From positions 9,362,001 to 9,426,000 of the forward strand of contig NC_047066.1 in assembly GCF_902459465.1 (NCBI RefSeq): a DNA stretch of 64,000 nucleotides. Direction: 5' to 3'. Below the pieces are notes generated by a model that did no database searches, had not been told where the DNA came from, and saw only the letters and a list, made by a program, of their open reading frames with translations. Below are positions 24,117-40,676 of the stretch, in pieces; the first letter of the stretch is position 1, and the number at the start of each line of letters is the position of its first letter. Both the position numbers and the translations under genes were made by a program. The stretch is from Asterias rubens (taxonomy: Eukaryota).

Positions 24117-27100
24117 TCACATCCTTATTTCCTCCGTCTGCCCACACGTCCTTGCACGCTTTTGCCTCTTCAGTCTTATCTCGACGACATAGTATAGCGA
24201 GACAGACACAAGAAGTAGCGAGATGATAGAGTAGAGTTTGTAAGACACACATACCGACGCTGGGATGCTGACAGCAAATGAAGCTGTTAGTCCACAGAAG
24301 AAACAGAAGTAGTAGGCAGAGAAAGCTGGCCCTGGGTTATCTGGATACAGCACGCTGATGAACACTAGATATAAAGAGAAACGAGCCAGCTAAAACATGC
24401 CTATTCGTTTTCACTACCTTATGGAGACCAAGGAAAAAACAAAAAAGGGAAAATAAAAGGACTCCATAGGGACACTCTAAAGGCCTGGGTGCCCCACAAG
24501 GAGTTTTGTGGGAAGATCTACAGTACGGGGCAATGGAAAGAACAAAACATGTCTCCAAAGGGATGGAAAAAAGGGAATTGTGTACCCCTGGAGATTGTGC
24601 CACTAACCCCCACCCCCCCCCCCTCACGGCGAATTGTGTACAAACTCTCTTCCATCCCATGAAATCATTTCCAATGTGGGGGACATACAAAATCTCCGGT
24701 GACAGATTTCCCTAGGGCACCGGTACGGTACCACATTTATACAAAAACATTGACTCATGTTAACTGATGTAACTAATAATTGTGTCCAAATACAACAGCT
24801 CTGCAAACTTTCAATCAAAGAAAATTACCTTCCGTGAATAATTGTTTTTATTTTTTTTATTTTTGAGTGACATTCAAATTATTTTTGGCTTTTCACTTAA
24901 TACGGCTGCCCATAGTTGTCCATTTTGCAACAACTTCGGCAGTCTACATAATGTATAAATCTGCTGGACAGTGTATAAATTCTGCTGAACCCACCTCGTG
25001 TTTGTAGTTGCCACACTGCATCCCCATACCCGAACAAAACAGCAATGGCGTACAGGTGCCAGACTTCACCTGTCTCTGGGTCCCAGACTAAACATACGAC
25101 CAACAAAGCCAAAGTATGAGCTCCGGATATTGTTATAAACATCACTCGCCCAACATACTGACGGATCAGTCCGATGGCCAAGTTTCCTACGGCATCGGCA
25201 GAAGCAAATGCCATAATGACGTAACCGACTGCGTGTATACCCTGTGTACAGTTCACGTATGACTGTGTGGGAAGAAAAGAAAGAACAACTAAAAACTAGA
25301 GATGTGGTTTTCTCATGTTTGTTCTAGTATGGTTGAGATGGAACCCCGTCACTCTCAATGCTGTCTTCCTATGGGTTGTACGATTCTCCCAGCGAGAACG
25401 ATTCTTTCGAAAACAAATCTTTTTTTCCCCGAGCTATTTAAAAATGTTAATAATTTTAAAATGTTGAATAGTCTGTCACAGTTATTCAGTCGTTTTTATC
25501 TAAGATGATTTGCAAATGAATAAACATAATATTAAAAGATATGTTGATGTGACTGTCCTGGGTTAAAACCCTGGAGGCCGAGGCTGCTAAACAAAAAACA
25601 CTGACGAAATAATTTCGCTTCATTGGAAGGGACTTTTAATTAGAGTACATTTAAGTCTGTTCGAGGGTAGTCCGAAGGTAATTACCATACTAGAAATCCG
25701 TTGTTTTAACCTGGTATGGGATTTGACGCATTGCATGGTGAGATATTTTTGTAACTTGACTTGCGGTACACCAACATTCTACCTTGCAAGTGGACATGTT
25801 ACCGCAAACCAAACATAATTATATTTAGATATATATACTATATATATAGATATATATACTTAGCCTAACAAACAGATAGAAAGGTATAGACTCTTGTTGG
25901 CTGCAGACCGTGGTGACCGTGGTGACCTTTGACTGAACTCAATCCCATCTCAAAGGTTGATGGAGATAATGTAATATTACGTAATATAAACAGTTCCTGT
26001 GGTATTGGTAGAAACTTTTTTCTCGGCAATAATATAAATTGCATACTCAAAGGTCTACATTCCTCACTGAGATGAGACATATAATTTGGTTACCATGGGT
26101 TTCTATAAAGATTTATTACCCTTTGATTGTATTACAATCAAGCGCGGATTCAGGAATTTGCCAGAAGATGGTGGAACCAATATAGCATGTAACAAAGGCC
26201 ATGACGGAGAGAAAGGTTAGAGGTAGGATCGAACAACGAAGAAGTACCTGACGAATTGAAATCAAGCGAGAAGCGTTATTTTTTTTCCAGGACAGATGAA
26301 ACCGCTTACCATAATGGGCGCATGCTAAGTGGCCCTCATTCTGTCCTGGTGGGAACAGACCCGAAAGTTGGTAAAACGCGCCCATTTATGGTAAGTGGCC
26401 TCATCTGTCCTGGGAAAAAAAGATGCACAAGCGGGCACACGAAAGTTAATTCTGTGGCGAGGTAACAGCTATTATACGGCACTAGTTATTGAAGCTTACA
26501 CAAGAGCATGCAGGAGTCGGGGCCCGTGGATACACACATGACTTCTATCATCTGCCCATTGCTCAGAAATATCACTCTGGCGTATTTTGTAAGGGTTTCA
26601 TAATGGGAGACTTTGGAACGCTAGGTGTCAGCAGACTTACCAGGTAAATTTCCATTGTTTACGTATAGTTCTGAGCATGCGCACATTACCGAGAACAATG
26701 GATTTTACCTGCTGCCACCAAGCGTCCCAAAAGTCTCCCATTGCCTTTGCATAGTTTGGAGCTCCTGGTAGTTCGGGTTTATTGATCAAAAGTGGTCTCC
26801 AAAGTAATTGTTTGGCAAAAAGAAACAATCACTTTGTAAGTAAAGCAATCACTTGTTTAATTGTACCTATTTTAAAAAAAACATTTTTCATTAATTAACA
26901 TACTTTGATCATTACAGATAAAGTTGCCATTAGTGACCTTGTTCGGAGAAAACGTTATTATTATTTGAATACCAGGGTTTACCAGGGATTACATAACACG
27001 ATTGATAACGGTGTCCTTGGACAACGGGTAATGTATTGGTCCCATATTGTAACATATAAAGGCAGACATTGTTGGTAATTACTCAAAATTATTGCTAGCA

Positions 27101-28794: not shown

Positions 28795-29156
28795 CAGCGG
28801 AACCAGGGGGTGGCCCGGAGGGCACGTGCCCCCCGGGTAAAGCAAAATCAGGAGTATCACAAGGCTCCAACAATATTTTGTTGACAAACTTTTACTGCAT
28901 TATTTGTATTGCATGTGTACCTTTAAGTAACTTCAGATGAAGTGGAAGGGTCCAAGAAATGTCTCCGAAAAGGCCTTAGATTGCACCAGAGAGTATCTAC
29001 GGCATAACGATTTCCCGGGGCCCTAAAGCGGGCCTAGGACCCCACGCCGTAATGGCCGCGCGCTTCGCGAACAACAAAACAATTTGTTTCAGCAAAACAA
29101 CAAATACTATGACTACAAAGTTGTCCCCCGGTTAAAAAATCCTGGATCCGCGCCTG
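28795..29156. mobile_element. hAT-like MITE nested in a Kolobok-like MITE, in the UNC93 head-to-head spacer
   Basis: Right TIR CCTGGATCCGCGCCTG and eroded left TIR CAGCGGAACCAGG, flanked by TTATG(CA)/TTATGCAT; the host MITE resumes on both sides. Confidence 0.7.
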
Positions 29157-29453
29157 TTATGCATAATTAAAAAAAATTGAGATACACCAAAGGAAAAGAC
29201 TGGTCTTTGACAAAATTACCAGAGGTGTCCATCAGTGCCTTTAAGGGGCATTGTTTGCCGTATATTCGTACAATCTGATAATATGCACAGTCCTGATGCG
29301 TTATTGACTAGATGTACGTGAGTATTATTAGCCCATCCAGTTTACAATTTGGTTGTTATCAGTCTCCCTATATTAACAACCTTTCTGTTTCATGTTATAT
29401 TCTACACTGAACATGATACCTATTCCAGAGCCAGTGAACGGCAGTTGTGCATC

Positions 29454-32400
29454 ATGGAGACCGCAGGGAATGTGTGAGTTGGTGTCATGAACTATAATAA
29501 CCTGTTTTTATTGTTTGTGTTACATTGTTACGATGTGTTTTTGCCTTGTATTTATGGCCTCCCAATCTTTGCCAATCTTTACGACGTTGCATTAAAACAA
29601 TATATTTATACAGCTATCAATGGACATCCAATCTGACGGTGGTGTCGCTCAGTCCAAATGTTTCATAGAAGTTGTGGACAAGTCGTTAATGGTATGTCGC
29701 TGTAAGATAGTTGAGTCGTGGTGGTGGCGTAATGGTTCAGGTTTGCACGATCGAAGACTATCTCTCGCGAGATCACTGCTCTCGCGCGAAGCTCCTGGCT
29801 GCCGACTAATGCCCCCCCCCCCCCCCCCCCCCCCCATTAAAGGCAGTGGACACACTTCACACTATTGGTAATCACTCAACATAATTATTAGCATGAAACC
29901 TCACTTGGTAACGAGTAAAGTGGATTTCGAGACCTCAGATTTAGAATTTGAGGTCTCGAAATCAAGCATCTGAAAGCACACAACTTCGTGTTTTTACTTT
30001 CATTATTATCTCGCAACATTCGATGACCGATTGAGCTATCATTAATTTAGCGTTGTATTTTAAGTGTACACTTTTTGCCCAGCAATACAAACAAACAAAT
30101 AAAACGAAGAAGAAAAAAAATCCAGAAGATAAAACGGTGTTTGAGCCAAGAGTTGAAACTAGTACAAGGCAATATAACTATCTTTGTTCTATTTCAGCTT
30201 CAATACGACTTCAAGAAGGAACACGGTAAACATCGTAGCAGTATGCGTAGTCTTTGCTTTTAACTCGTTTTCCTATAGCTCTCTACAGTCCATGCAGAGC
30301 AGCTTGAACCCGTCCAAAGGGCTTGGCCTGGCTAGCCTGAGCTGTCTCTACGCTGCAATGACTTTGTCAAGTCTATTTATATCTCCAATAATGATCAGGA
30401 AACTCGGCACGAAGAGGACCATGATTCTTGGCTCACTGGCCTTTGGTCTGTACGCAGTGTCGAACTTTTTCCCGCGGTTTTATACGATAGTCCCGTCTGC
30501 GCTCATCTGTGGGCTTGCCACCGGACCGAACTGGTCCGCGGTGTCGACTTATTTGCACACCCTTGCTCAGGACAAAGCCAGGGGTACCGGTGAAGAGCGG
30601 GCAGAGGTGCTCACAAGTCGATATCTCGGTTTGATCAATACTGCATGGCAAGTAGCGTACATCATCTCAACATTTCTAGTTTCAAATGTGATGACAAATA
30701 ACGCCGAAGAAGATGGCGTCTTGATGATGCAGAATTTCAGCGTGTCCCGATGTGGTGCGAGGGACTGCGGTGCTGATATGCCGCAAGAGGCAGTCGGTGC
30801 GGTCAAACCGCCTGATTATATCATCCACATTTTCTTAGCATGCTTTTCAACGAGTGGTTTGATTGTGGCACCTCTTGTGGGCGTATTCTTCATTCAAGAC
30901 ATCGGGCCAAAGTATAAGGCTGTGTCTGCTGCAGAAGTGGATGCAACGCCTGGAGAGGAGACTATTAACTGGCTGGCTACACTCAAAGCATTACAAAGGC
31001 CACAGCTCTTGATGCTCACACCGTTTGCTGTATATACCGGCATGTTCTACTCATTTGTAATGGCGGACTTTACAAAGGTAATTTTGTTTTCAGTTCAGTT
31101 GAATTAATTTGGCTTAAAAAAGCCAATCTAACAAAACAAAGGACGATCAAATATTTTTTACATACCTATTTTTAAATTATTAAAGTAAAAGTTGAGCGGG
31201 CAGAAGTCACAACAATGTTGAACATGGTGGAATTTTTGCTAAATTTCTTAAAGGCAGTGGACACTATTGGTTATTACTCAAAATAATTGTTAACGCCTTA
31301 CTTGGTTACGAGTAATGGAGAGAGGTTGATAGTGAAAAACATTGTGAGAAATGGCTCCCTCTAACGCTGAAGTAACGTAGTGTTCGAGAAAGAAGTATGT
31401 TTCCACGAATTTGATTTCGAGACCTCAGAATTAGATTTTGAGGTCTCTAATTCAAGCATCTGAAAGCCCACAACTTCGTGTGACAAGGGTGTTTTTTTTT
31501 TTTCATTATCACTCGCAACTTACTTCGACGACCAATTGAGCTCAAATTTTCACAGGATTGTTATTATGCATAAAAGTGAAAAATGTGTTGAGATACACCA
31601 AGTGAGAAGACTGGTCTTTGACAATCTCCAGTAGTGTCCAGTGTCTCTAAGCAAGGTATCAAACTTGACCGCTTGCTAGACCAGCATGCACCTCATTCAA
31701 CGCCAACAGCACACGTCGACTATTTGCGATAAGGTCTACTGTCAGACCAAGACAGTGACCATGAGCAAGTTCGAGTGTGCACAATGGTTAACTAAAGGTT
31801 GACCATTTTTACTCGAACCCAGGCTGGTCGACCATTGGTTGACTACTGTGGTCGACCATTTGGAACCAGCCTCGAGCCCATGGTTTCTTCACTGGTCCCA
31901 ATAGCATGTTCCGTTCTAACATGTGTTAAGCGCAGAGGGGAACCAGTGACACTTAAGCAAAAAGGTGGGAGGTCGACTAGACTACCAAACGAGTCGTTCG
32001 GGTGAGTACGTCACTGCACATGTGCGTTGCTAGTCTGTGGTCGACCACTGGTGGACTAAAATGTGCGCACTCGAAGTTGCTAAATGTAATATGTTGCTTG
32101 TTTATAAAACTATATTTTTTTTTCAAATGTTATCTACATTTTTTTTTTTTATGAATTCCAGTCTTTCGTTAGCTGCACGCAAGGCATTCACATGGTCGGT
32201 TACGTCATCATGACGTTTGCAACAGCTGATGCAGTTTTCACAGTAGTGATAGGCTGGATTGGGAAGGTGCTGGGTAGATTGGCGTTATTTACTGGGGCAG
32301 CGGCGATAAACATTGCCGTAATGGCCGTGTGCTTGGTCTGGAACCCTGACTTAGGAGAGAGATGGCATCTGTACTCACTGGCAGTGGCATTGGCTTTGTG

Positions 32401-33515
32401 TGATGCAGTATGGACGATACAGATACGAGGTACAAGTTAATTTTGTGTAATGAATAACCACAAATTCACAAAGTTTGCAACCTGTTATAAATATAGGCAT
32501 AATAAAATAATCTTTGAACATAGTTCAACAGCGAATGCATTATTTTGGTTATTGTATAGTTTCGTTTTGTACAGAACAAGTACAAGCACATCCGATCACT
32601 CAGCAGATCTCTCTGATTTTCGCTAACGGAATAANNNNNNNNNNNNNNNNNNNNNNNNNNNNNNNNNNNNNNNNNNNNNNNNNNNNNNNNNNNNNNNNNN
32701 NNNNNNNNNNNNNNNNNNNNNNNNNNNNNNNNNNNNNNNNNNNNNNNNNNNNNNNNNNNNNNNNNNNNNNNNNNNNNNNNNNNNNNNNNNNNNNNNNNNN
32801 NNNNNNNNNNNNNNNNNNNNNNNNNNNNNNNNNNNNNNNNNNNNNNNNNNNNNNNNNNNNNNNNNNNNNNNNNNNNNNNNNNNNNNNNNNNNNNNNNNNN
32901 NNNNNNNNNNNNNNNNNNNNNNNNNNNNNNNNNNNNNNNNNNNNNNNNNNNNNNNNNNNNNNNNNNNNNNNNNNNNNNNNNNNNNNNNNNNNNNNNNNNN
33001 NNNNNNNNNNNNNNNNNNNNNNNNNNNNNNNNNNNNATGTTTTGGCTGTTGTTACTGTTGGCGTTGTTTTTTATTTTTTATTTTTTATTTTTTATTGTTG
33101 GTATATTGTTAATTAAGCTGTTTTTCAGTATTGCACCTGCCTGCTACCGTTGTTGTATTTGATGTGTTGATACCTATAATTCGGAAGTAAACAAACCACA
33201 ATCTTGATATTGTACATTGCAGTACTAGCCAGCGTGCTGTTCCCAAACAACCAAGAGGCGGTATTCTCCGCGATTTACTTCTTCAGTTCTATCGGATACA
33301 CCATATCATTTGCTACCAGTATCCCATCATCTGTATGCATCTCTTACAAGTTGTATGGCCTCACCACTCTACTCTGTGTTTCTATGCTCCTCTACTACAC
33401 TGATGAAGTCCTAGTGAAGATGAAAGACAAGCGAGGGTATAAAGAGGGTGGTGAAGTTACTAGAGAAGTCGTCATGGTCAGCTTTGATGGTGATGGTGCA
33501 GTCAAAACACTCTAA
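29454..33515 (+). CDS. UNC93A: UNC93A-like MFS membrane protein, copy A (486 aa)
   Basis: Exons 29454-29473 (METAGNV), 30198-31077, 32162-32429, 33223-33515 (1461 nt, phases 2,0,1). The last two introns are in the same positions as in the - strand paralog. Family-level symbol. Confidence 0.9.
31256..31647. mobile_element. Kolobok/T2-like MITE in UNC93 copy A intron 2
   Basis: TTAA|AGGCAGTGGACAC ... GTGTCCAGTGTCT; the homologous copy is at about 38390-38908. Confidence 0.8.
32635..33036. other. Assembly gap (402 N)
   Basis: Run of N at the same intron position as gap 39787-39954. Confidence 1.
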
Positions 33516-33517
33516 AA

Positions 33518-33753
33518 ACTAAAGAGTTGAATCCAACACTTGGAATAGTTCGGTGAGTGACTACACTTTGAAAGTGATGAGTCCAGCATTGTATATGTTA
33601 AATCCAGCATTTTAAAGTATTCGGTCAACAACCCTTTTTATTCTGGATCAGAAATGTTAAACGCTAGATTTAACAAAAAAAACAATGGATGCAACACTTT
33701 CAAAGTGTAGTCACTCACCGAAATCATGCACGGATTGGATTCAACTCTTTAGT
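33518..33753. mobile_element. Palindromic MITE starting 3 nt after the UNC93-A stop codon
   Basis: ACTAAAGAGTTGAATCC...CGGTGAGTGACTACACTTTGAAAGTG is inverted to CACTTTCAAAGTGTAGTCACTCACCG...GGATTCAACTCTTTAGT. Confidence 0.8.
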
Positions 33754-34120
33754 GTGTTAGTAACTAGTTTCGGAATTCTTTATCTGCCATTCTAAATGAT
33801 CTCTGAAATGTCGGAAACAGCGATTTGACGCGAGGGAATGGAGACTTTGATTTTTGTAGATTTGAAAATCTACAAATCTCGTCGACCGACGCATTCCTGC
33901 ACCTTACTAGTTAGTAAACGATTGGAAGTGACTTTTAATTAGAGTACATTTAAGTCTGTTCGAGGGTAGTCCGAAGGTAATTACCATACTAGAAATCCGT
34001 TGTTTTAACCTGGTATGGGATTTGAGGCATTGCATGGTGAGATATTTTTGTAACTTGACTTGCGGTACACCAACATTCTACCTGGCAAGTGGACATGTTA
34101 CCGCAAACCAAATATATATA

Positions 34121-35972
34121 TACATGTAATGAATAGGGTAGATGGCCTTAGCTTTCGATCCAATCCGGACCTTCTTCAGAGGCATAAAACAAGTACAAAC
34201 AAATACATATCCATTTATAGAAAAAGAGAGGGGGAAAGGGATTAAGGAAAGGATCCAGAAAGAAGCGGGAAAATAACAGCCAATCATAGTTTCTATTTCA
34301 GAGACAATACTGGTGGCTATGAACCAATAGGAGTGAAGTGGCGAGGACAAAGGATGTTTAGAATGAAAGGATGGGTTACTGGACCATAAAAGTGGTAAAT
34401 GTATTGTTCGACAACAATGCAGGGAGACATGAAAGGGTAGGATTAGAGAGCAAGTTGCATCATGATGCAACTAACAATGGTCAATTAATAAGAATAGCAA
34501 GATCAAAGGTATGATGATTTTTAAAAAAGGTATGAGGGACCTGTGGAAAAAAAGGGGGGGGGGTTACTTACATCAGATAGTTACAGTGATGAATTTATAA
34601 AAACAACTTTAAACTAGATTAATTTATACTTTATGTACAAAATATATACAACAGTGTTTATGTTGAGTCCAAAGGGTTTGACTGTCTTGAGTTGGTGGAT
34701 CCAGTGTGATTCTCTACTCTTGCGGTGTGTGTCATCACCATTGCAAGCTTCAATCACCAGAAGTTCAACATCAATGACACTATGATTGGGGCTGTTGAAG
34801 TGGATAGAGACTGGGTACGGTTTCTTAGTCTTTATGGAAGAGACATGATTCGCAAAGCGAAGACTAAGTTTTGTCTTAGTCTCTCCCACATATTGTAGCC
34901 CACATCTCTTACATGATATGACATAGACTACATTAGACGTGCTGCGTTCAGAGTCGGTCTTGATGGTGTATGAAGAGCCAGTGGTATGACTCTTCACCTT
35001 AAGTGAGGGCTTAATGTGCAGACACGTTTTGCATTTGGAACGGGTAAATTTGTGACAGCCCAGTATATCTGTCGGGGTTGTGTTTGGACTGTACCTAGGG
35101 GAAGTTTGGCCCTGACTAGTATGTCACCAAGGTTCTTAGGGCGGCGGAATGCAACCATGGGAACCTCAGGGATTGCTGAGTGTAACCTGCTGGAGGAGTG
35201 AAGTATAGGCATGTTATTATTGAGAATTGAGGGAAGTTTGGGTAGTTTGGGGTGGAAGGTAGTGACCAAAGCCACTCTATTGGTAGGAGCTTTTTTAGCT
35301 CCCGTGTTAGTCAACAGAGTATGACGAGGTACGTTGAGAGCCCTGTTGATAGCAAGTTGGACCCTACGTTCGCTATGTCCCCTAGATACAAGGTGTTACC
35401 TTAGCTCTGATGAGCGCCTCTTGTACAGGGTATCTGTGGAACAGATACGCCTGATACGTAAGGCCTGACTGTAAGCAATTGCCTTCTTACAGTGACCAGG
35501 GTGAACTATTGGAGAGAAGGTACTGGTGGGTGTCGGTGGGTTTACTGTAAACATCTGTGGCAAGGCCATTAGGAGACTTGGTTATTGTCACATCTAGAAA
35601 GTTCACACTGGTGAGAGATTGTTCGGTAGTGAACTTTATGGTGGGGTGAAATGAGTTGATATGGTCAATAAACTCATCCAAGCTGTCTTGGTCACCACAC
35701 CAGATGGAGAAAATATTATCAATAAATCTCCACCAAACTAGTGGTCGGTTGGGGGCGGAGGACAGGAGTCTGTCCTCCAACTGAGACATGAATAGGTTAG
35801 CATATGAGGGTGCCATTTTGGTACCCATGGCAGTACCCTGTACCTGTAGAAAATGCCTGTCAGAAAATGTGAAATTATTCTTCATTAGAATGTGGCTCAT
35901 GAGTTCCTTAATATGACTCACTGAGGGGCGGGACTGATTACTAGCATTGAGGGCAGAGACACAAGCACTCAG
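34121..35972 (-). mobile_element. Penelope-like retroelement, 5'-truncated and disrupted (RT C-half plus GIY-YIG endonuclease)
   Basis: RT: NNFTF..QVQGTAMGTKMAPSYANLFM..WWRFIDNIF..FLDV..VYSKPTDTHQYL (35487-35970). Linker LVTTFHPKLP..AFRRPKNLGDILVRA. GIY-YIG VVYVISCKRCGLQYVGET..RESHWIHQLKTVKPFGLN (34614-34997). Frameshifts present; TA-rich flanks. Confidence 0.95.
34142..34185 (-). ncRNA. Minimal type I hammerhead ribozyme
   Basis: - strand: AUGCCU-CUGAAGA-A-GGUCC(GGAUU)GGAUC-GAA-AGCU-A-AGGCCAU. Core intact; stems I and II pair; stem III is the palindrome AGCU. Confidence 0.85.
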
Positions 35973-36662
35973 TATATAGATATATATACTTAGCCTAACA
36001 AACAGATAGAAAGGTATAGACTCTTGTTGGCTGCAAACCTTTATCCATCCATACAATTCAAGGTTCGTGTAGAAATGCTTGCTGCAAAAGTTAGTCTCCA
36101 TGTGTTTCAATATGGATGTGTACAACATGTGTATGTGGGCATGTCAAAGGGGACACTGCCGGTTGGCAAACTTCAGAAGGGTCGTGGTGACCTTTGACTG
36201 AACTCAATCCCATCTCAAAGATTGATGGAGATAATGTAATATTACGTAATATAAACAGTTCCTGTGGTATTGGTAGAAACTGTATTCTCGGCAATAATAT
36301 AAATTGCATACTCAAAGGTCTACATTCCTCACTGAGATGAGACATATAATTTGGTTAAAAAATCCTGGATCCGCGCCTGTTATGCATAATTTAAAAAAAA
36401 TTGAGATACACCAAAGGAAAAGACTGGTCTTTGACAAAAAATTACCAGAGGTGTCCATCAGTGCCGTATATTTGTACAATCTGATAATACGCACAGTCGA
36501 CCTGATGCGTTATTGACTAGATGTACGAGAGTATTATAAGCCCACCCAGCTTACAATTTGGTTGTTATCAGTCTCCCTATATTAATAACCTTTCTGTTTC
36601 ATGATATATTGTACACTGAACATCTTACCTATTCCAGAGCCAGTGAACGGCAGTTGTGCATC

Positions 36663-39600
36663 ATGGAGACCGCAGGGAATGTGTGAGTTGGTGTCATTAA
36701 CTATAATAACCTGTTTTGTTTGTTTTTGTAACATTGTTACGATGTGTTTTTGCCTTGTATTTATGGCCTCCCAATCTTTATCAACCTTTACGACGTTGCA
36801 TTAAAACAATATATTTATACAGCTATCAATGGACATCCAATCTGACGGTGGTGTCGCTCAGTCCAAATGTTTCATAGAAGTTGTGGACAAGTCGTTAATG
36901 GTCTGTCGCTGTAAGATAGTTAAGTCGTGGTGGTGGCGTAATGGTTCAGGTTCGCACGATCGAAGACTATCTCTCGCGAGATCACTGCTCTCGCGCGAAG
37001 CTCCTGGCTGCCGACTAATACCCCCCATTAAAGGCAGTGGACACACTTCACACTATTGGTTATTACTCAACATAATTATTAGCATGAAACCTCACTTGGT
37101 AACGAGCATCTGAAAGCACACAACTTTGCGTATGACAGGGGTGTTTTTACTTTCATTATTATCTCGCAACATTCGATGACCGATTGAGCTATCATTAATT
37201 TAGCGTTGTATTTTAAGTGTACACTTTTGGCCCAGCAACACAAACAAACAAATAAAACGAAGACAAACAAATCCAGGAGATAAAACGGTGTTTGAGCCAA
37301 GAGTTGAAACTAGTACAAGGAAATATAACATTCTTTGTTCTATTTCAGCTTCAATACGACTTCAAGAAGGAACACGGTAAACATCGTAGCAGTATGCGTA
37401 GTCTTTGCTTTTAACTCGTTTTCCTATAGCTCTCTACAGTCCCTGCAGAGCAGCTTGAACCCGTCCAAAGGGCTTGGCCTGGCTAGCCTGAGCTGTCTCT
37501 TCGCTGCAATGTCTTTGTCAAGTCTATTTATATCTCCAATAATGATCAGGAAACTCGGCACGAAGAGGACCATGATTCTTGGCTCACTGACGACTGGTCT
37601 GTACGCAGTGTCGAACTTTTTCCCGCGGTTTTATACGATAGTCCCGTCTGCGCTCATCTGTGGGCTTGCCGCCGGACCGAACTGGTCTGCGGTGTCGACT
37701 TATTTGCATACCCTTGCCCAGGACAAAGCCAGGGTTACCGGTGAAGAGCGGGCAGAGGTGCTCACAAGTCGATATCTCGGTTTGGTCAATACCGCATGGC
37801 AAGTAGCGTACATCATCTCTACATTTTTTGTTTCAAATGTGATGACAAATAACGCCGAAGAAGATGGCGTCTTGATGATGCAGAATTTCAGCGTGTCCCG
37901 ATGTGGTGCGAGGGACTGCGGTGCTGATATGCCGCAAGAGGCAGTCGGTGCGGTCAAACCGCCCGATTATATCATCCACATTTTCTTAGCATGTTTTTCA
38001 ACGAGTGGTTTGATTGTGGCACCTCTTGTGGGCGTATTCTTCATTCAAGACATCGGGCCAAAGTATAAGGCTGTGTCTGCTGCAGAAGTGGATGCAACGC
38101 CTGGAGAGGAGACTATTACCTGGCTGGCTACACTCAAAGCATTACAAAGGCCACAGCTCTTGATGCTCACACCGTTTGCTGTATATACCGGCATGTTCTA
38201 CTCATTTGTAATGGCGGACTTTACAAAGGTAATTTTGTTTTCAGTTCAGTTGAATTTATTTGGCTTAAAAAAGCCAATCTAACAAAACAAAGGACGATCA
38301 AATATTTTTTACATACCTATTTTTAAATTATTAAAGTAAAAGTTGAGCGGGCAGAAGTCACAACAATGTTGAACATGGTGGAATTTTTGCTATTGGTTAT
38401 TGGTTATTAGGCCGTGTCCGAAACGACGACTTCGGCTACAGCTACGTCTAGATCAGCGCGTCTGTCAGTGTTGAAGAATAGGCAGACGCGCGCGATCTAG
38501 ACGTAGCTGTAGCCGAAGTCACCGTTTCGGACACGGCCACTCAAAATAATTGTTAACGCCTTACTTGGTTACGAGTAATGGAGAGAGGTTGATAGTGAAA
38601 AACATTGTGAGAAATGGCTCCCTCTAACGCTGAAGTAACGTAGTTTTCGAGAAAGAAGTATGTTTCCACGAATTTGATTTCGAGACCTCAGAATTAGATT
38701 TTGAGGTCTCTAATTCAAGCATCTGAAAGCACACAACTTCGTGTGACAAGGGTGGTTTTTTTTTCATTATCACTCGCAACTTACTTCGACGACCAATTGA
38801 GCTCAAATTTTCACAGGATTGTTATTATGCATAAAAGTGAAAAATGTGTTGAGATACACCAAGTGAGAAGACTGGTCTTTGACAATCTCCAGTAGTGTCC
38901 AGTGTCTCTAAGCTAGGTATCAAACTTGACCGCTAGCTAGACCAGCATGCACCTCATTCAACGCCAACAGCACACGTCGACTATTTGCGATAAGGTCTAC
39001 TGTCAGACCAAGACAGTGACCATGAGCAAGTTCGAGTGTGCACATGGTTAACTAAAGGTTGACCATTTTTACTCGAACCCAGGCTGGTCGACCATTGGTT
39101 GACTACTGTGGTCGACCATTTGGAACCAGCCTCGAACCACTGGTCCACATAGCATGTTCCGTTCTAACATGTGTTAAGCGCAGAGGGGAACCAGTGACAC
39201 TTAAGCAAAAAGGTGGGAGGTCGACTAGACTAAAATGTGCGCACTCGAACTTGCTAAATGTAATATGTTACTTGTTTATAAAACTATAATTTGTTCAAAT
39301 GTTATCTACCTTTATTTTTTTATGAATTCCAGTCTTTCGTTAGCTGCACGCAAGGCATTCACATGGTCGGTTACGTCATCATGACGTTTGCAACAGCTGA
39401 TGCAGTTTTCACAGTAGTGATAGGCTGGATTAGGAAGGTGCTGGGTAGATTGGCGTTATTTACTGGGGCAGCGGCGATAAACATTGCCGTAATGGCCGTG
39501 TGCTTGGTCTGGAACCCTGACTTAGGAGAGAGATGGCATCTGCACTCACTGGCAGTAGCATTGGCTTTGTGTGATGCAGTATGGACGATACAGATACGAG

Positions 39601-40437
39601 GTACAAGTTAATTTTGTGTAATGAATAACCACAAACTCACAAAGTTTGCAACCTGTTATAAATAGGCATAATAAAATAATCTTTGACCATAGTTCAACAG
39701 CGAATGCATTATTTTGGTTATTGTATAGTTTCGTCCAAGCACATCCAATCACTCAGCAGATCCCTCTGATTTTCGCTAACGGAATANNNNNNNNNNNNNN
39801 NNNNNNNNNNNNNNNNNNNNNNNNNNNNNNNNNNNNNNNNNNNNNNNNNNNNNNNNNNNNNNNNNNNNNNNNNNNNNNNNNNNNNNNNNNNNNNNNNNNN
39901 NNNNNNNNNNNNNNNNNNNNNNNNNNNNNNNNNNNNNNNNNNNNNNNNNNNNNNGAAGATGTTTTGGCTGTTGTTACTGTTGGCGTTGTTTTTTATTTTT
40001 TATTTTTTATTTTTCATTGTTGGTATATTGTTAATTAAGCTGTTTTTCAGTATTGCACCTGCCTGCTACCGTTGTTGTATTTGATGTGTTGATACCTATA
40101 ATTCGGAAGTAAACAAACCACAATCTTGATATTGTACGTTGCAGTACTAGCCAGCGTGCTGTTCCCAAACAACCAAGAGCCGGTATTCTCCGCGATTTAC
40201 TTCTTCAGTTCTATCGGAAACACCATATCATTTGCTACCAGTATCCCATCATCTGTATGCATCTCTTACAAGTTGTATGGCCTCACCACTCTACTCTGTG
40301 TTTCTATGCTCCTCTACTACACTGACGAAGTCCTAGTGAAGATGAAAGACAAGCGAGGGTATAAAGAGGGTGGTGAAGTTACTAGAGAAGTCGTCATGGT
40401 CAGCTTTGATGATGATGGTGCAGTCAAAACACTCTAA
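36663..40437 (+). CDS. UNC93A: UNC93A-like MFS membrane protein, copy B (486 aa)
   Basis: Exons 36663-36682, 37349-38228, 39333-39600, 40145-40437. About 98% nucleotide identity to copy A by manual comparison; frame intact. May be an allelic haplotype rather than a paralog. Confidence 0.85.
38410..38538. mobile_element. 129-bp near-perfect palindromic MITE (Harbinger-like ends), present only in copy B
   Basis: GGCCGTGTCCGAAACG..GACTTCGGCTACAGCTACGTCTAGATC / GATCTAGACGTAGCTGTAGCCGAAGTC..CGTTTCGGACACGGCC; absent at the homologous site near 31275. Confidence 0.85.
39787..39954. other. Assembly gap (168 N)
   Basis: Run of N. Confidence 1.
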
Positions 40438-40676
40438 AAACTAAAGAGTTGAATCCAACACTTGGAATAGTTCGGTGAGTGACTATACTTTGAAAGTGTT
40501 GAGTCCAGCATTTTACATGTTAAATCCAGAATTTTTAAGTATTCGGTCTCGTCGGTGTCTTTATCTCAAAGTATTTCCATTCTGTGGAGCCATTCTGTGT
40601 ATTTTTTTTACTTTTTATCCCGCGAAACTCCTTAGTCTGTTCAGTTCGCGGAGAGTTGATCAAACAGCCCAGTTGT

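What the first reader, a model, noticed from the sequence alone, without database searches (positions are those of the whole stretch)
34142..34185. Apparently intact minimal hammerhead ribozyme at the 3' end of a Penelope-like element
Seen (- strand, same strand as RT/GIY-YIG): stem I AUGCCU/AGGC(C)AU; core CUGAAGA; one extra A; stem II GGUCC/GGAUC with loop GGAUU; GAA; palindromic stem III AGCU; predicted cleavage after CUA (between 34149 and 34148). It lies about 25 nt from the element end. Known: PLE terminal repeats carry minimal type I hammerheads whose very short palindromic stem III is thought to need dimerisation. Inference: the catalytic RNA has outlived the protein (RT is FIDN and frameshifted). 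Any - strand transcript passing here, antisense between the two UNC93 copies, could be cleaved, especially with a second copy in trans.
Basis: partly seen in the sequence, partly recalled or inferred. Interest (0 to 1): 0.75.

Follow-up and report, generated by a model that had tools for sequence, protein, structure and literature searches.

The report
Penelope-type minimal hammerhead, solo dead copy
The motif is a real, intact copy of the small "minimal hammerhead" self-cutting RNA that Penelope-like jumping genes are already known to carry. Here it sits at the tail of a truncated, dead insertion, is one of more than 500 identical copies in the genome, and shows no sign of being transcribed or cut at this locus.

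Summary
**Observation: confirmed.** Window 34185..34142 (- strand) reads helix I, CUGAAGA, one extra A, a 5-bp helix II, GAA, the palindrome AGCU, and A17. The predicted cut lies between 34149 and 34148.

**What it is.**
- Rfam hammerhead models do not detect it.
- Stems covary across three hammerhead families in this genome: 94% of cells pair, against 24-36% in slid controls.

**Where it sits.** It lies 22 nt from the 3' end of a 5'-truncated PLE fragment (35971..34127).
- The fragment inserted into a (TA)n microsatellite. An empty paralogous site survives at about 25823-25843.
- At least 517 identical copies exist in the genome.
- Full-length copies carry the motif twice, in the upstream pseudo-LTR and in the 3' UTR.

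- "Outlived the protein" is not meaningful. The copy is about 2% diverged, so 44 nt stay unchanged by chance 33-45% of the time, and the ORF was truncated on arrival.
- There is no second hammerhead in the 64 kb window.
- Four RNA-seq runs give zero depth in the bins that lack other repeats, beside the insertion.
- No read ends pile up at the cut site.
- The AGCU trans-dimer is very weak.

The kind is known. This scan has already reported Penelope-type hammerheads elsewhere in this genome.

The parts
34142..34185 (-). Minimal type I hammerhead motif (PLE min-HHR), whole
   Evidence: Sequence read. Pattern unique in the window, 0/100 shuffles. 65 bits with model R1, although the model includes this sequence.
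34180..34185 (-). Helix I, 5' strand AUGCCU
   Evidence: Pairs with 34148-34142 with C44 bulged. The inner 4 pairs covary across families.
34173..34179 (-). Catalytic box C3-A9, CUGAAGA
   Evidence: Columns are invariant in alignment A1 except N7.
34172..34172 (-). Extra unpaired A between A9 and G10.1
   Evidence: A hallmark of PLE min-HHRs (PMC4209133). 517 genomic copies have it and 0 lack it.
34157..34171 (-). Helix II hairpin GGUCC-GGAUU-GGAUC
   Evidence: Present in the MFE fold. G10.1-C11.1 in 19/19 rows. 4 of 5 pairs have double changes across families.
34154..34156 (-). G12 A13 A14 of the core
   Evidence: invariant columns.
34150..34153 (-). A15.1-G15.2-C16.2-U16.1, palindromic AGCU (helix III only as a dimer)
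   Evidence: It is ACGU in family C, so the palindrome is kept through a double change. Duplex energy -2.5 to -4.5 kcal/mol.
34149..34149 (-). A17; predicted cleavage 3' of it (between 34149 and 34148)
   Evidence: Standard hammerhead numbering applied. No read ends pile up here.
34142..34148 (-). Helix I, 3' strand AGGC(C)AU
34127..34148 (-). 22-nt terminal segment AGGCCAUCUACCCUAUUCAUUA that ends every copy of the family
   Evidence: 41 loci share it and then diverge into (TA)n and unrelated flanks.
34112..34126 (-). TA-rich remnant of the target microsatellite, 3' side
   Evidence: Comparison with the empty paralogous site.
34127..35971 (-). 5'-truncated Penelope-like element fragment (about 1.85 kb)
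   Evidence: Family matches begin at 35971. blastn/tblastn against a long-ORF copy covers aa 465-907 at 98% nt identity, with 2 frameshifts. The insertion is bounded by the empty site.
34614..34997 (-). GIY-YIG endonuclease domain ORF piece
   Evidence: Pfam PF01541, E 1.6e-07.
35505..35972 (-). RT fragment (motif C reads FIDN at 35726..35715; FIDD in a long-ORF copy)
   Evidence: RVT_1 weak hit. tblastn and the FIDD comparison.
35972..35995 (-). TA-rich target microsatellite, 5' side of the insertion
25823..25843 (.). Empty paralogous site (TA-rich) in an upstream copy of the segmental duplication
   Evidence: 33921-34122 matches 25622-25823 at 97%. 35973-36039 matches 25843-25909 at 98.5%.

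Best explanation
This is a genuine minimal hammerhead of the kind carried by Penelope-like retroelements (PLE min-HHR). It is preserved in a young, 5'-truncated, dead-on-arrival insertion.

**Shown for the family.**
- The motif lies about 520 nt downstream of the RT/GIY-YIG ORF stop, and 22 nt upstream of the point where every genomic copy ends and a (TA)n target begins.
- Every sampled copy that keeps the very start of the 5' region carries the motif twice. An upstream pseudo-LTR joins the 5' UTR through a near-constant junction: hammerhead, 22 nt, UAUAUAUU, CCCGGUCACC.

**Inferred for the family.**
- The template is a longer-than-unit transcript.
- Reverse transcription starts internally at the UA-rich stretch, primed from a nicked (TA)n target.
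- The two hammerheads of such a transcript can pair their AGCU palindromes into a double hammerhead and trim the RNA to unit length, probably with help from the element's protein, as shown for an Anolis PLE.

**At this locus.** The motif is a single copy with no partner within 64 kb and no detectable read-through transcript. It is most likely an inert relic, not a working cleavage site.
For: **Motif and hallmarks.**. The hallmarks were compared with PMC4209133: the extra nucleotide between 9 and 10.1, G10.1-C11.1, palindromic 15.2-16.2, a long helix II and a short helix I.

**Covariation** across three families in the same genome.
- 94.3% of cells pair, against 24-36% for slid controls.
- 9 of 11 pairs show double changes.

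**PLE identity.**
- RVT_1 plus a C-terminal GIY-YIG in a 908-codon open frame in other copies.
- Hammerheads both upstream and downstream of the ORF, about 4.42 kb apart.
- The same junction, bar one or two bases in a few copies, in all 15 distinct places where the anchor at the very start of the 5' region was found.

**Copy number and insertion.**
- Uniform 3' end followed by (TA)n.
- At least 517 identical 35-mers, against 0 in the control.
- The 3' end gives 1363 candidates and the 5' region gives 53.
- This copy is truncated at aa 465, frameshifted, and reads FIDN.
- The insertion is bounded by an empty paralogous site.

**Inertness here.**
- No second hammerhead in the window.
- Zero RNA depth in the flank bins free of other repeats, no ends at the cut site, and equal coverage across it.
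- Weak AGCU duplex.

**Protein-assisted cleavage and internal RT initiation in a PLE:** PMC11167929.
Against: - No Rfam hammerhead model matches, even on 91 nt at E <= 10.
- There is no direct evidence of cleavage anywhere in the family. The RNA-seq libraries look unstranded, and their protocols would under-sample 5'-OH and cyclic-phosphate ends.
- Covariation rests on three lineages, so on few independent events. The rows were ascertained with a pattern that required the core boxes.
- Helix I has a bulged C and only 4+2 pairs.
- Every genomic copy retains the 22 nt beyond the cut site. The RNA used as template was therefore not cut at its 3' hammerhead, so cleavage cannot be obligatory at that site.
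- Published min-HHRs cleave poorly in vitro (PMC4209133). PLE clades without hammerheads still proliferate (PMC8557442).
Confidence: 0.85

Rival explanations
1. This solo hammerhead is an active cleavage site for antisense (- strand) transcripts running between the UNC93-like gene copies, working through dimerisation with hammerhead RNAs from other loci in trans.
For: The motif is sequence-intact. RNA from the family's 3' region is present at about 150-180x per orientation in four runs, so partner RNAs exist in principle.
Against: - Zero depth in the flank bins free of other repeats (33900-34007, 34062-34088) in all four runs.
- No pile-up of ends at 34148/34149, and equal coverage at 34142 and 34164.
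- The 4-bp AGCU duplex is -2.5 to -4.5 kcal/mol. My inference is a millimolar Kd, far above cellular RNA levels.
- Single min-HHRs showed no detectable activity in vitro (PMC4209133).
- No partner in cis within 64 kb.
Confidence: 0.04
2. At the family level the motif works mainly as a structured 3' recognition or positioning signal for the element's RT/EN. It sits 22 nt upstream of the reverse-transcription start. Its catalysis is vestigial or purely protein-dependent.
For: - The distance to the copy end is fixed and (TA)n follows.
- All copies retain sequence 3' of the cut site, so the template was uncut there.
- In the Anolis PLE, hammerhead catalytic mutants did not affect insertion in vitro, cleavage needed the protein, and no RNA-seq ends were found at the site (PMC11167929).
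- No ends at the site here either.
Against: - The catalytic core is strictly kept: CUGANGA, GAAA, G10.1-C11.1 and H17 across three otherwise unrelated stem sequences. A mere binding hairpin would not require that.
- Fungal and plant PLE hammerheads cleave well as monomers (PMC4209133).
Confidence: 0.1
3. Chance resemblance: the hammerhead-like boxes are a coincidence in a repeat.
For: Rfam hammerhead models give no hit.
Against: - 0 of 100 shuffles.
- All four non-descriptor hallmarks of PLE min-HHRs are present.
- Stems covary across three families.
- The location in PLE terminal repeats is as published.
Confidence: 0.01

Closest known systems
Minimal hammerheads of metazoan Penelope-like elements (min-HHR; Cervera & de la Peña 2014, PMC4209133)
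   Same: - Type I topology with an open helix I of 4-5 bp.
- Helix II of at least 5 bp.
- Unpaired nucleotide between A9 and G10.1.
- G10.1-C11.1.
- No real helix III, only a palindrome at 15.1-16.1.
- Sits in the pseudo-LTR / 3' end of an RT + GIY-YIG element.
- Hundreds of dispersed solo copies from 5'-truncated insertions, and several covarying families per genome.
   Different: Nothing essential. The host appears to be a marine invertebrate; earlier scan notes say a sea star, which I did not verify. No echinoderm is named in that paper's main text. The family is unusually homogeneous, with at least 517 identical copies, which resembles the D. virilis case of recent invasion.
Poseidon PLE of Anolis carolinensis (PAc; PMC11167929)
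   Same: - Hammerhead in the pLTR.
- Reverse transcription starts internally on a longer RNA.
- No RNA-seq ends at the cut site.
- Cleavage is not needed for insertion in vitro.
   Different: - In PAc the ORF starts inside the hammerhead. Here the ORF starts about 1.1 kb downstream of the upstream hammerhead, and the ATG in helix I is not the ORF start.
- Here the 3' junction is a UA-rich stretch matching a (TA)n target.
CChMVd (+) hammerhead with extra A10 (De la Peña & Flores 2001, as cited in PMC4209133)
   Same: One extra unpaired nucleotide between A9 and G10.1 in an otherwise canonical core.
   Different: It is a viroid type III hammerhead with a full helix III and loop-loop contacts, and it is not a retroelement motif. 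This comparison rests on the citation and my own knowledge and was not tested here.
Metazoan non-LTR retrozymes (PMC7229834; bioRxiv 10.64898/2026.07.22.740005)
   Same: Elsewhere in this genome the same hammerhead occurs in short tandem units of 258-nt and 165-nt period. These are made of the PLE's 3' end joined to its 5' start, as expected if retrozymes derive from PLE pLTRs.
   Different: The window locus is a single copy inside a 1.85-kb coding fragment, not a tandem array. Retrozymes usually carry canonical type I hammerheads with loop-loop contacts.
Rfam Hammerhead_1 (RF00163) and other Rfam hammerhead models
   Same: Same catalytic core.
   Different: No match at any threshold tried. 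The motif lacks helix III and loop 1.

Membership tests
PLE minimal hammerhead (min-HHR, Cervera & de la Peña 2014) | Catalytic boxes CUGANGA and GAAA in type I order, with H (not G) at position 17 | tested here: met
   CUGAAGA at 34179-34173, GAAA at 34156-34153, A17 at 34149.
PLE minimal hammerhead (min-HHR, Cervera & de la Peña 2014) | [quoted passage not shown] | tested here: met
   A at 34172. 517 genomic copies have it and 0 lack it. Families B (A) and C (C) also have one.
PLE minimal hammerhead (min-HHR, Cervera & de la Peña 2014) | G10.1-C11.1 closing pair of helix II | tested here: met
   G34171-C34157. 19 of 19 rows of alignment A1.
PLE minimal hammerhead (min-HHR, Cervera & de la Peña 2014) | Palindromic 15.2-16.2 (helix III only by dimerisation) | tested here: met
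   AGCU at 34153-34150, and ACGU in family C. The pair 39/40 of A1 is GC:14, CG:3, UG:2.
PLE minimal hammerhead (min-HHR, Cervera & de la Peña 2014) | Helix II longer than canonical, short helix I, supported by compensatory changes among families of one genome | tested here: met
   Helix II is 5 bp and helix I is 4(+2) bp. 8 of 9 helix I/II pairs show double changes. 94.3% of cells pair over all 11 pairs counted, against 24-36% in slid controls.
PLE minimal hammerhead (min-HHR, Cervera & de la Peña 2014) | Location in the terminal repeats (pLTR) of an element encoding RT plus GIY-YIG | tested here: met
PLE minimal hammerhead (min-HHR, Cervera & de la Peña 2014) | Self-cleavage (weak, as dimer or with protein) | tested here: inconclusive
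   No pile-up of RNA-seq read ends at the site and equal coverage across it. The libraries are not designed to capture 5'-OH or cyclic-phosphate ends. No bench assay was possible.
Rfam Hammerhead_1 / canonical type I hammerhead | Match to the covariance model; helix III hairpin; loop 1-loop 2 tertiary contacts | tested here: not met
   No hammerhead hit at the gathering threshold or at E <= 10, even on 91 nt. There is no helix III hairpin and no loop 1.
Non-LTR retrozyme | Short (about 150-450 bp) head-to-tail tandem repeats, each with a hammerhead | tested here: not met
   Only one hammerhead in the 64-kb window. Such arrays do exist elsewhere in the genome.
Canonical EN+ Penelope-like element | Single ORF with RT followed by a C-terminal GIY-YIG; pLTR from partial tandem; frequent 5' truncation and tail-to-tail inverted pairs; microsatellite targets | tested here: met
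   - 908-codon frame with RVT_1 at 421-572 and GIY-YIG at 813-895.
- pLTR junction.
- 53 candidates for the 5' region against 1363 for the 3' end.
- Inverted pairs over (TA)n.
- Clade (Penelope/Poseidon, Neptune or Nematis) not determined.

The most novel reading that the evidence does not exclude
The hammerhead and the UA-rich stretch 22 nt downstream might form one functional module. The folded ribozyme would position the PLE protein so that a nicked (TA)n target primes reverse transcription at a fixed site. Protein binding would also switch on cleavage. The hundreds of solo copies embedded in host transcripts would then become cleavage sites only when the element's protein is expressed.
Probability: 0.05. 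Interest if true: 0.6.

Novelty: new member of a known kind. Interest (0 to 1): 0.2.

Why it matters
It matters little for this locus. The motif is a textbook Penelope-type minimal hammerhead in a dead insertion.

The family as a whole could be a convenient natural system for an open question: what PLE hammerheads do.
- It is young and homogeneous, with at least 517 identical copies.
- Some copies keep a long open frame.
- The pLTR junction is near-constant.
- Derived mini tandem arrays exist.
- The ribozyme sits a fixed 22 nt from the reverse-transcription start.

It also adds in-genome covariation support for the min-HHR architecture, from three unrelated stem sets sharing one core and one extra-nucleotide position.

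Tried and rejected
1. **Rfam.** Searches at the gathering threshold, at E <= 10 on 2.5 kb, and on 91 nt gave no hammerhead hit. I take this as a limit of the models, because the motif has no helix III, and not as evidence against it.

2. **ATG in helix I as the ORF start** (ATG at 34185 opening MPLKKV..., as in the Anolis PLE). Rejected. In two copies examined whose frame is open for 908 codons, the first Met lies about 1.1 kb or about 170 nt downstream of the upstream hammerhead, in another context.

3. **Element running on to about 34014.** RNA reads and "opposite strands" joints cover 34008-34119. Rejected. The empty paralogous site shows that 33921-34122 is host flank, so those reads come from a different repeat.

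4. **Histone stem-loop after the hammerhead** (lead from earlier scan notes). It is absent from this family. It belongs to a separate family C.

5. **RNAcofold of two 44-mers.** It cannot represent the double hammerhead, because the pairs cross. Its MFE is an artefactual extended helix II duplex. I used the energy of the isolated AGCU duplex instead.

6. **Genome count with covariance model R1.** Only 150 candidates are scored and all reach 57-67 bits, so the result is saturated and gives only a lower bound. I used exact-pattern counts instead.

7. **Selection test on old copies.** An unbiased sample was not possible, because the genome search scores only the best 40 candidates.

8. **Host organism.** I did not run the large protein searches, since the element's identity was already settled by Pfam and its structure. 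The host therefore stays unverified.

Full report
**1. Observation**

On the - strand, 34185..34142 reads AUGCCU / CUGAAGA / A / GGUCC-GGAUU-GGAUC / GAA / AGCU / A / AGGCCAU. In standard hammerhead numbering:
- C3-A9 = 34179-34173
- extra A = 34172
- G10.1-C11.1 = 34171/34157
- G12-A14 = 34156-34154
- A15.1-U16.1 = 34153-34150
- A17 = 34149
- predicted scissile bond between 34149 and 34148

The pattern CTGANGA-N(8-30)-GAAAGCTA occurs once in the window and in none of 100 dinucleotide-preserving shuffles. The minimum-free-energy fold of the 44-mer, and of the same region with 30 or 60 nt of flanks, forms helices I and II around an open junction. With 100-nt flanks the fold differs.

**2. Rfam**

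No hammerhead family matched in any of three searches:
- gathering threshold over the whole window
- E <= 10 over 2.5 kb
- E <= 10 over 91 nt centred on the motif

The motif has no helix III hairpin and no loop 1, and Rfam's hammerhead models expect both. So it is not a member of the Rfam type I family as modelled. That does not bear on the separate, descriptor-defined class below.

**3. Match to the known class**

Cervera & de la Peña 2014 (PMC4209133) defined minimal hammerheads in the terminal repeats of Penelope-like elements (PLEs). They listed features that were not part of their search descriptor but recur:
- an unpaired nucleotide between 9 and 10.1
- G10.1-C11.1
- palindromic 15.2-16.2
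- a long helix II and a short helix I
- several covarying consensus families per genome

All are present here. In this genome, 517 copies of the 35-mer GCCU...GCUA carry it (control 0) and none lacks it.

**4. Covariation**

A genome-wide pattern search (827 hits against 21 in the control) and a second search (336 against 0) revealed three families.

| Family | Core, extra base and helix II | Helix I |
|---|---|---|
| A (this one) | as described in section 1 | AUGCCU / AGGC(C)AU |
| B | CUGAUGA-A-GUAGU-UGUU-GCUAC-GAAAGCUC | UGCAU / AUGCA; one copy has UGUGU / ACACA |
| C | CUGAAGA-C-GAGCAG-AGUAUA-CUGUUC-GAAACGUC | UCUC / GAGA |

On a 19-row alignment (A1), the hammerhead pairing gives these results:
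- 94.3% of cells form standard pairs, against 24-36% when the 3' partners are slid by 1-3 columns.
- 9 of 11 pairs show changes on both sides.
- The covariation score is 0.66, against 0.02-0.09 for slid controls.
- G10.1-C11.1 and A15.1-U16.1 are invariant.

Two caveats apply. The rows were found with a pattern that fixes the core boxes but not the stems. They also represent three lineages, so independent events are few.

**5. The element**

The motif lies on the same strand as a GIY-YIG piece (34997..34614, Pfam E 1.6e-07) and an RT piece.

*This copy.*
- Family matches to the window begin at 35971.
- Against a copy with a 908-codon open frame, the window covers aa 465-907 at about 98% nucleotide identity.
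- It has two frameshifts (near 35536/35505 and 35075).
- It reads FIDN where the other copy reads FIDD (35726..35715).
- So this copy was 5'-truncated on insertion and is also decayed.

*Other copies.*
[quoted passage not shown] This is a canonical EN+ PLE.
- I built no consensus and single out no copy.

**6. Ends and insertion**

In 41 loci the sequence after the cut site is the same 22 nt (AGGCCATCTACCCTATTCATTA), followed by a (TA)n run and then unrelated DNA. Several loci are tail-to-tail inverted pairs across the (TA)n.

The window itself holds an older paralogue of the flanking DNA:
- 33921-34122 matches 25622-25823 (97%).
- 35973-36039 matches 25843-25909 (98.5%).
- Only a TA-rich stretch of about 20-30 nt lies between these in the paralogue.

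So the PLE fragment is a clean insertion of 35971..34127 into a (TA)n microsatellite, made after the local duplication. The cut site is 22 nt from the element end.

**7. Family architecture and likely mechanism**

- Two copies with a long open frame were examined. In one, with the complete 5' region, the hammerheads lie about 4.42 kb apart. In the other, which lacks most of the 5' UTR, they lie about 3.44 kb apart.
- In both, one hammerhead lies upstream of the ORF and one about 520 nt after the stop codon.
- At all 15 distinct places where the first 25 nt of the 5' region were found, the hammerhead-bearing piece lies directly upstream. The junction is the same apart from one or two bases in a few copies: hammerhead, 22 nt, TATATATT, CCCGGTCACC.
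- The 5' region gives about 53 candidate matches, and the 3' end gives 1363.

From this I infer three things. None of them is shown.
- The template RNA is longer than one unit.
- Reverse transcription begins internally at the UA-rich stretch, using a nicked (TA)n target as primer. This agrees with the internal initiation shown for an Anolis PLE (PMC11167929) and with the (TA)n bias noted for PLEs (PMC8557442).
- The two hammerheads of such an RNA could pair their AGCU palindromes into a double hammerhead and trim it.

One direct consequence of the data limits this model. All copies keep the 22 nt beyond the cut site, so the template was not cut at its 3' hammerhead before copying.

**8. This locus: is it active?**

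- Model R1, built from A1, finds only this hammerhead in the 64-kb window with filters off. The next hit scores 12 bits. So there is no partner in cis.
- The AGCU/AGCU duplex is worth -2.5 to -4.5 kcal/mol. I infer a Kd of roughly 1-20 mM, so pairing in trans is implausible without help.

Raw reads of four RNA-seq runs labelled as the same species show the following:
- Depth of 150-180 per orientation over the hammerhead. 80-90% of the laid reads are only 95-99% alike, so they come from other copies.
- Depth falls towards the element interior, in step with the genomic copy-number gradient.
- Both orientations are equal, so the libraries are unstranded or both strands are represented.
- Depth is zero in the flank bins free of other repeats (33900-34007, 34062-34088).
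- No position shows a pile-up of read starts or ends.
- Coverage at 34142 (about 250-320 reads) equals coverage at 34164.

So there is no sign that this locus is transcribed through, and no sign of cleavage in the family. The caveat is that standard libraries under-sample 5'-OH and cyclic-phosphate ends.

**9. "Outlived the protein"**

At 1.8-2.5% divergence, 44 nt remain unchanged by chance with probability 0.33-0.45. Intactness here needs no selection.

Common variants seen in reads inside the motif fall in three places:
- loop 2 (34164, 34166)
- the outermost helix I pair (34142)
- a 1-nt deletion of the extra A or A9 (34172), in 13% of reads in one run only

None falls elsewhere in the core or in helix II. 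That fits selection on source copies, but the evidence is thin.

**10. Comparison and novelty**

The kind is known (PMC4209133). Its unresolved function is discussed in PMC11167929 and PMC8557442. Links between PLE pLTRs and retrozymes are proposed in PMC7229834 and in bioRxiv 10.64898/2026.07.22.740005.

This scan has already reported Penelope-type minimal hammerheads at other places in the same genome. Those notes concern mainly a family with a histone stem-loop. I confirmed that it exists as family C, and it is distinct from the family here.

The present finding is a new member of a known kind. At this locus it is most likely an inert relic.

Noticed in passing
window 25622-26092, 29130-30149, 30000-33750, 33921-34122, 35973-37300, 37153-40650: Local segmental duplication carrying UNC-93-like (MFS) gene copies, in at least three partial units at 87-99% identity. 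The PLE insertion is present in only one unit, and the unit around 25823-25843 keeps the empty (TA)n site.
   Followed up: partly
window 34008-34119: Host flank just beyond the PLE end belongs to another repeat. RNA reads cover 34008-34061 and 34089-34115 at up to 460x. Hundreds of reads join about 34039 to about 34119 on opposite strands, which suggests a foldback or palindromic repeat with a shorter loop at other loci.
   Followed up: no
window 33518-33753 (and paralogue 40440-40534): Long imperfect hairpin with 95-nt arms, 81% complementary. It gives a sub-threshold Rfam hit to the plant family MIR161 (33.8 bits against a gathering score of 90, E 7e-05). Most likely a chance resemblance of a hairpin repeat.
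   Followed up: no
G000, e.g. L065-L070 (C1:706735, C1:1960641 ...): A third min-HHR family: CUGAAGA-C-GAGCAG...CUGUUC-GAAACGUC. About 11 nt further on comes a perfect histone-mRNA-type stem-loop, GGCUCUUUUCAGAGCC-ACCA. There are 336 exact pattern matches against 0 in the control. This agrees with earlier scan notes and is a different family from the one in this finding.
   Followed up: partly
G000, e.g. L032-L037 (C1:11273739, C1:12561694 ...): A second min-HHR family (B) that shares the AGCU palindrome and the extra A. It has unrelated helix I and II sequences and compensatory changes within the family (UGCAU/AUGCA against UGUGU/ACACA).
   Followed up: partly
G000 C8:13302220-13302894 (L091/L092/L094); C2:3838653-3838848 and C2:8012260-8012455 (L045/L046): Short head-to-tail units of 258-nt and 165-nt period, each with the family A hammerhead. 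They are built from the PLE 3' end joined to the first about 80-160 nt of its 5' region. These are retrozyme-like non-autonomous derivatives.
   Followed up: partly
window 34172 (reads of run X21 only): 13% of reads (33 of 258) in one RNA-seq study lack one A of the A9/extra-A pair. That would give a canonical core spacing. The assembly holds no copy with that sequence (0 against 517). It could be individual polymorphism, another population, or an artefact.
   Followed up: partly
window 32525-33200 and 39760-40113: Long minisatellite with an 8-9-nt period, inside or next to the last exon region of the UNC-93-like copies and present in both duplicated units.
   Followed up: no
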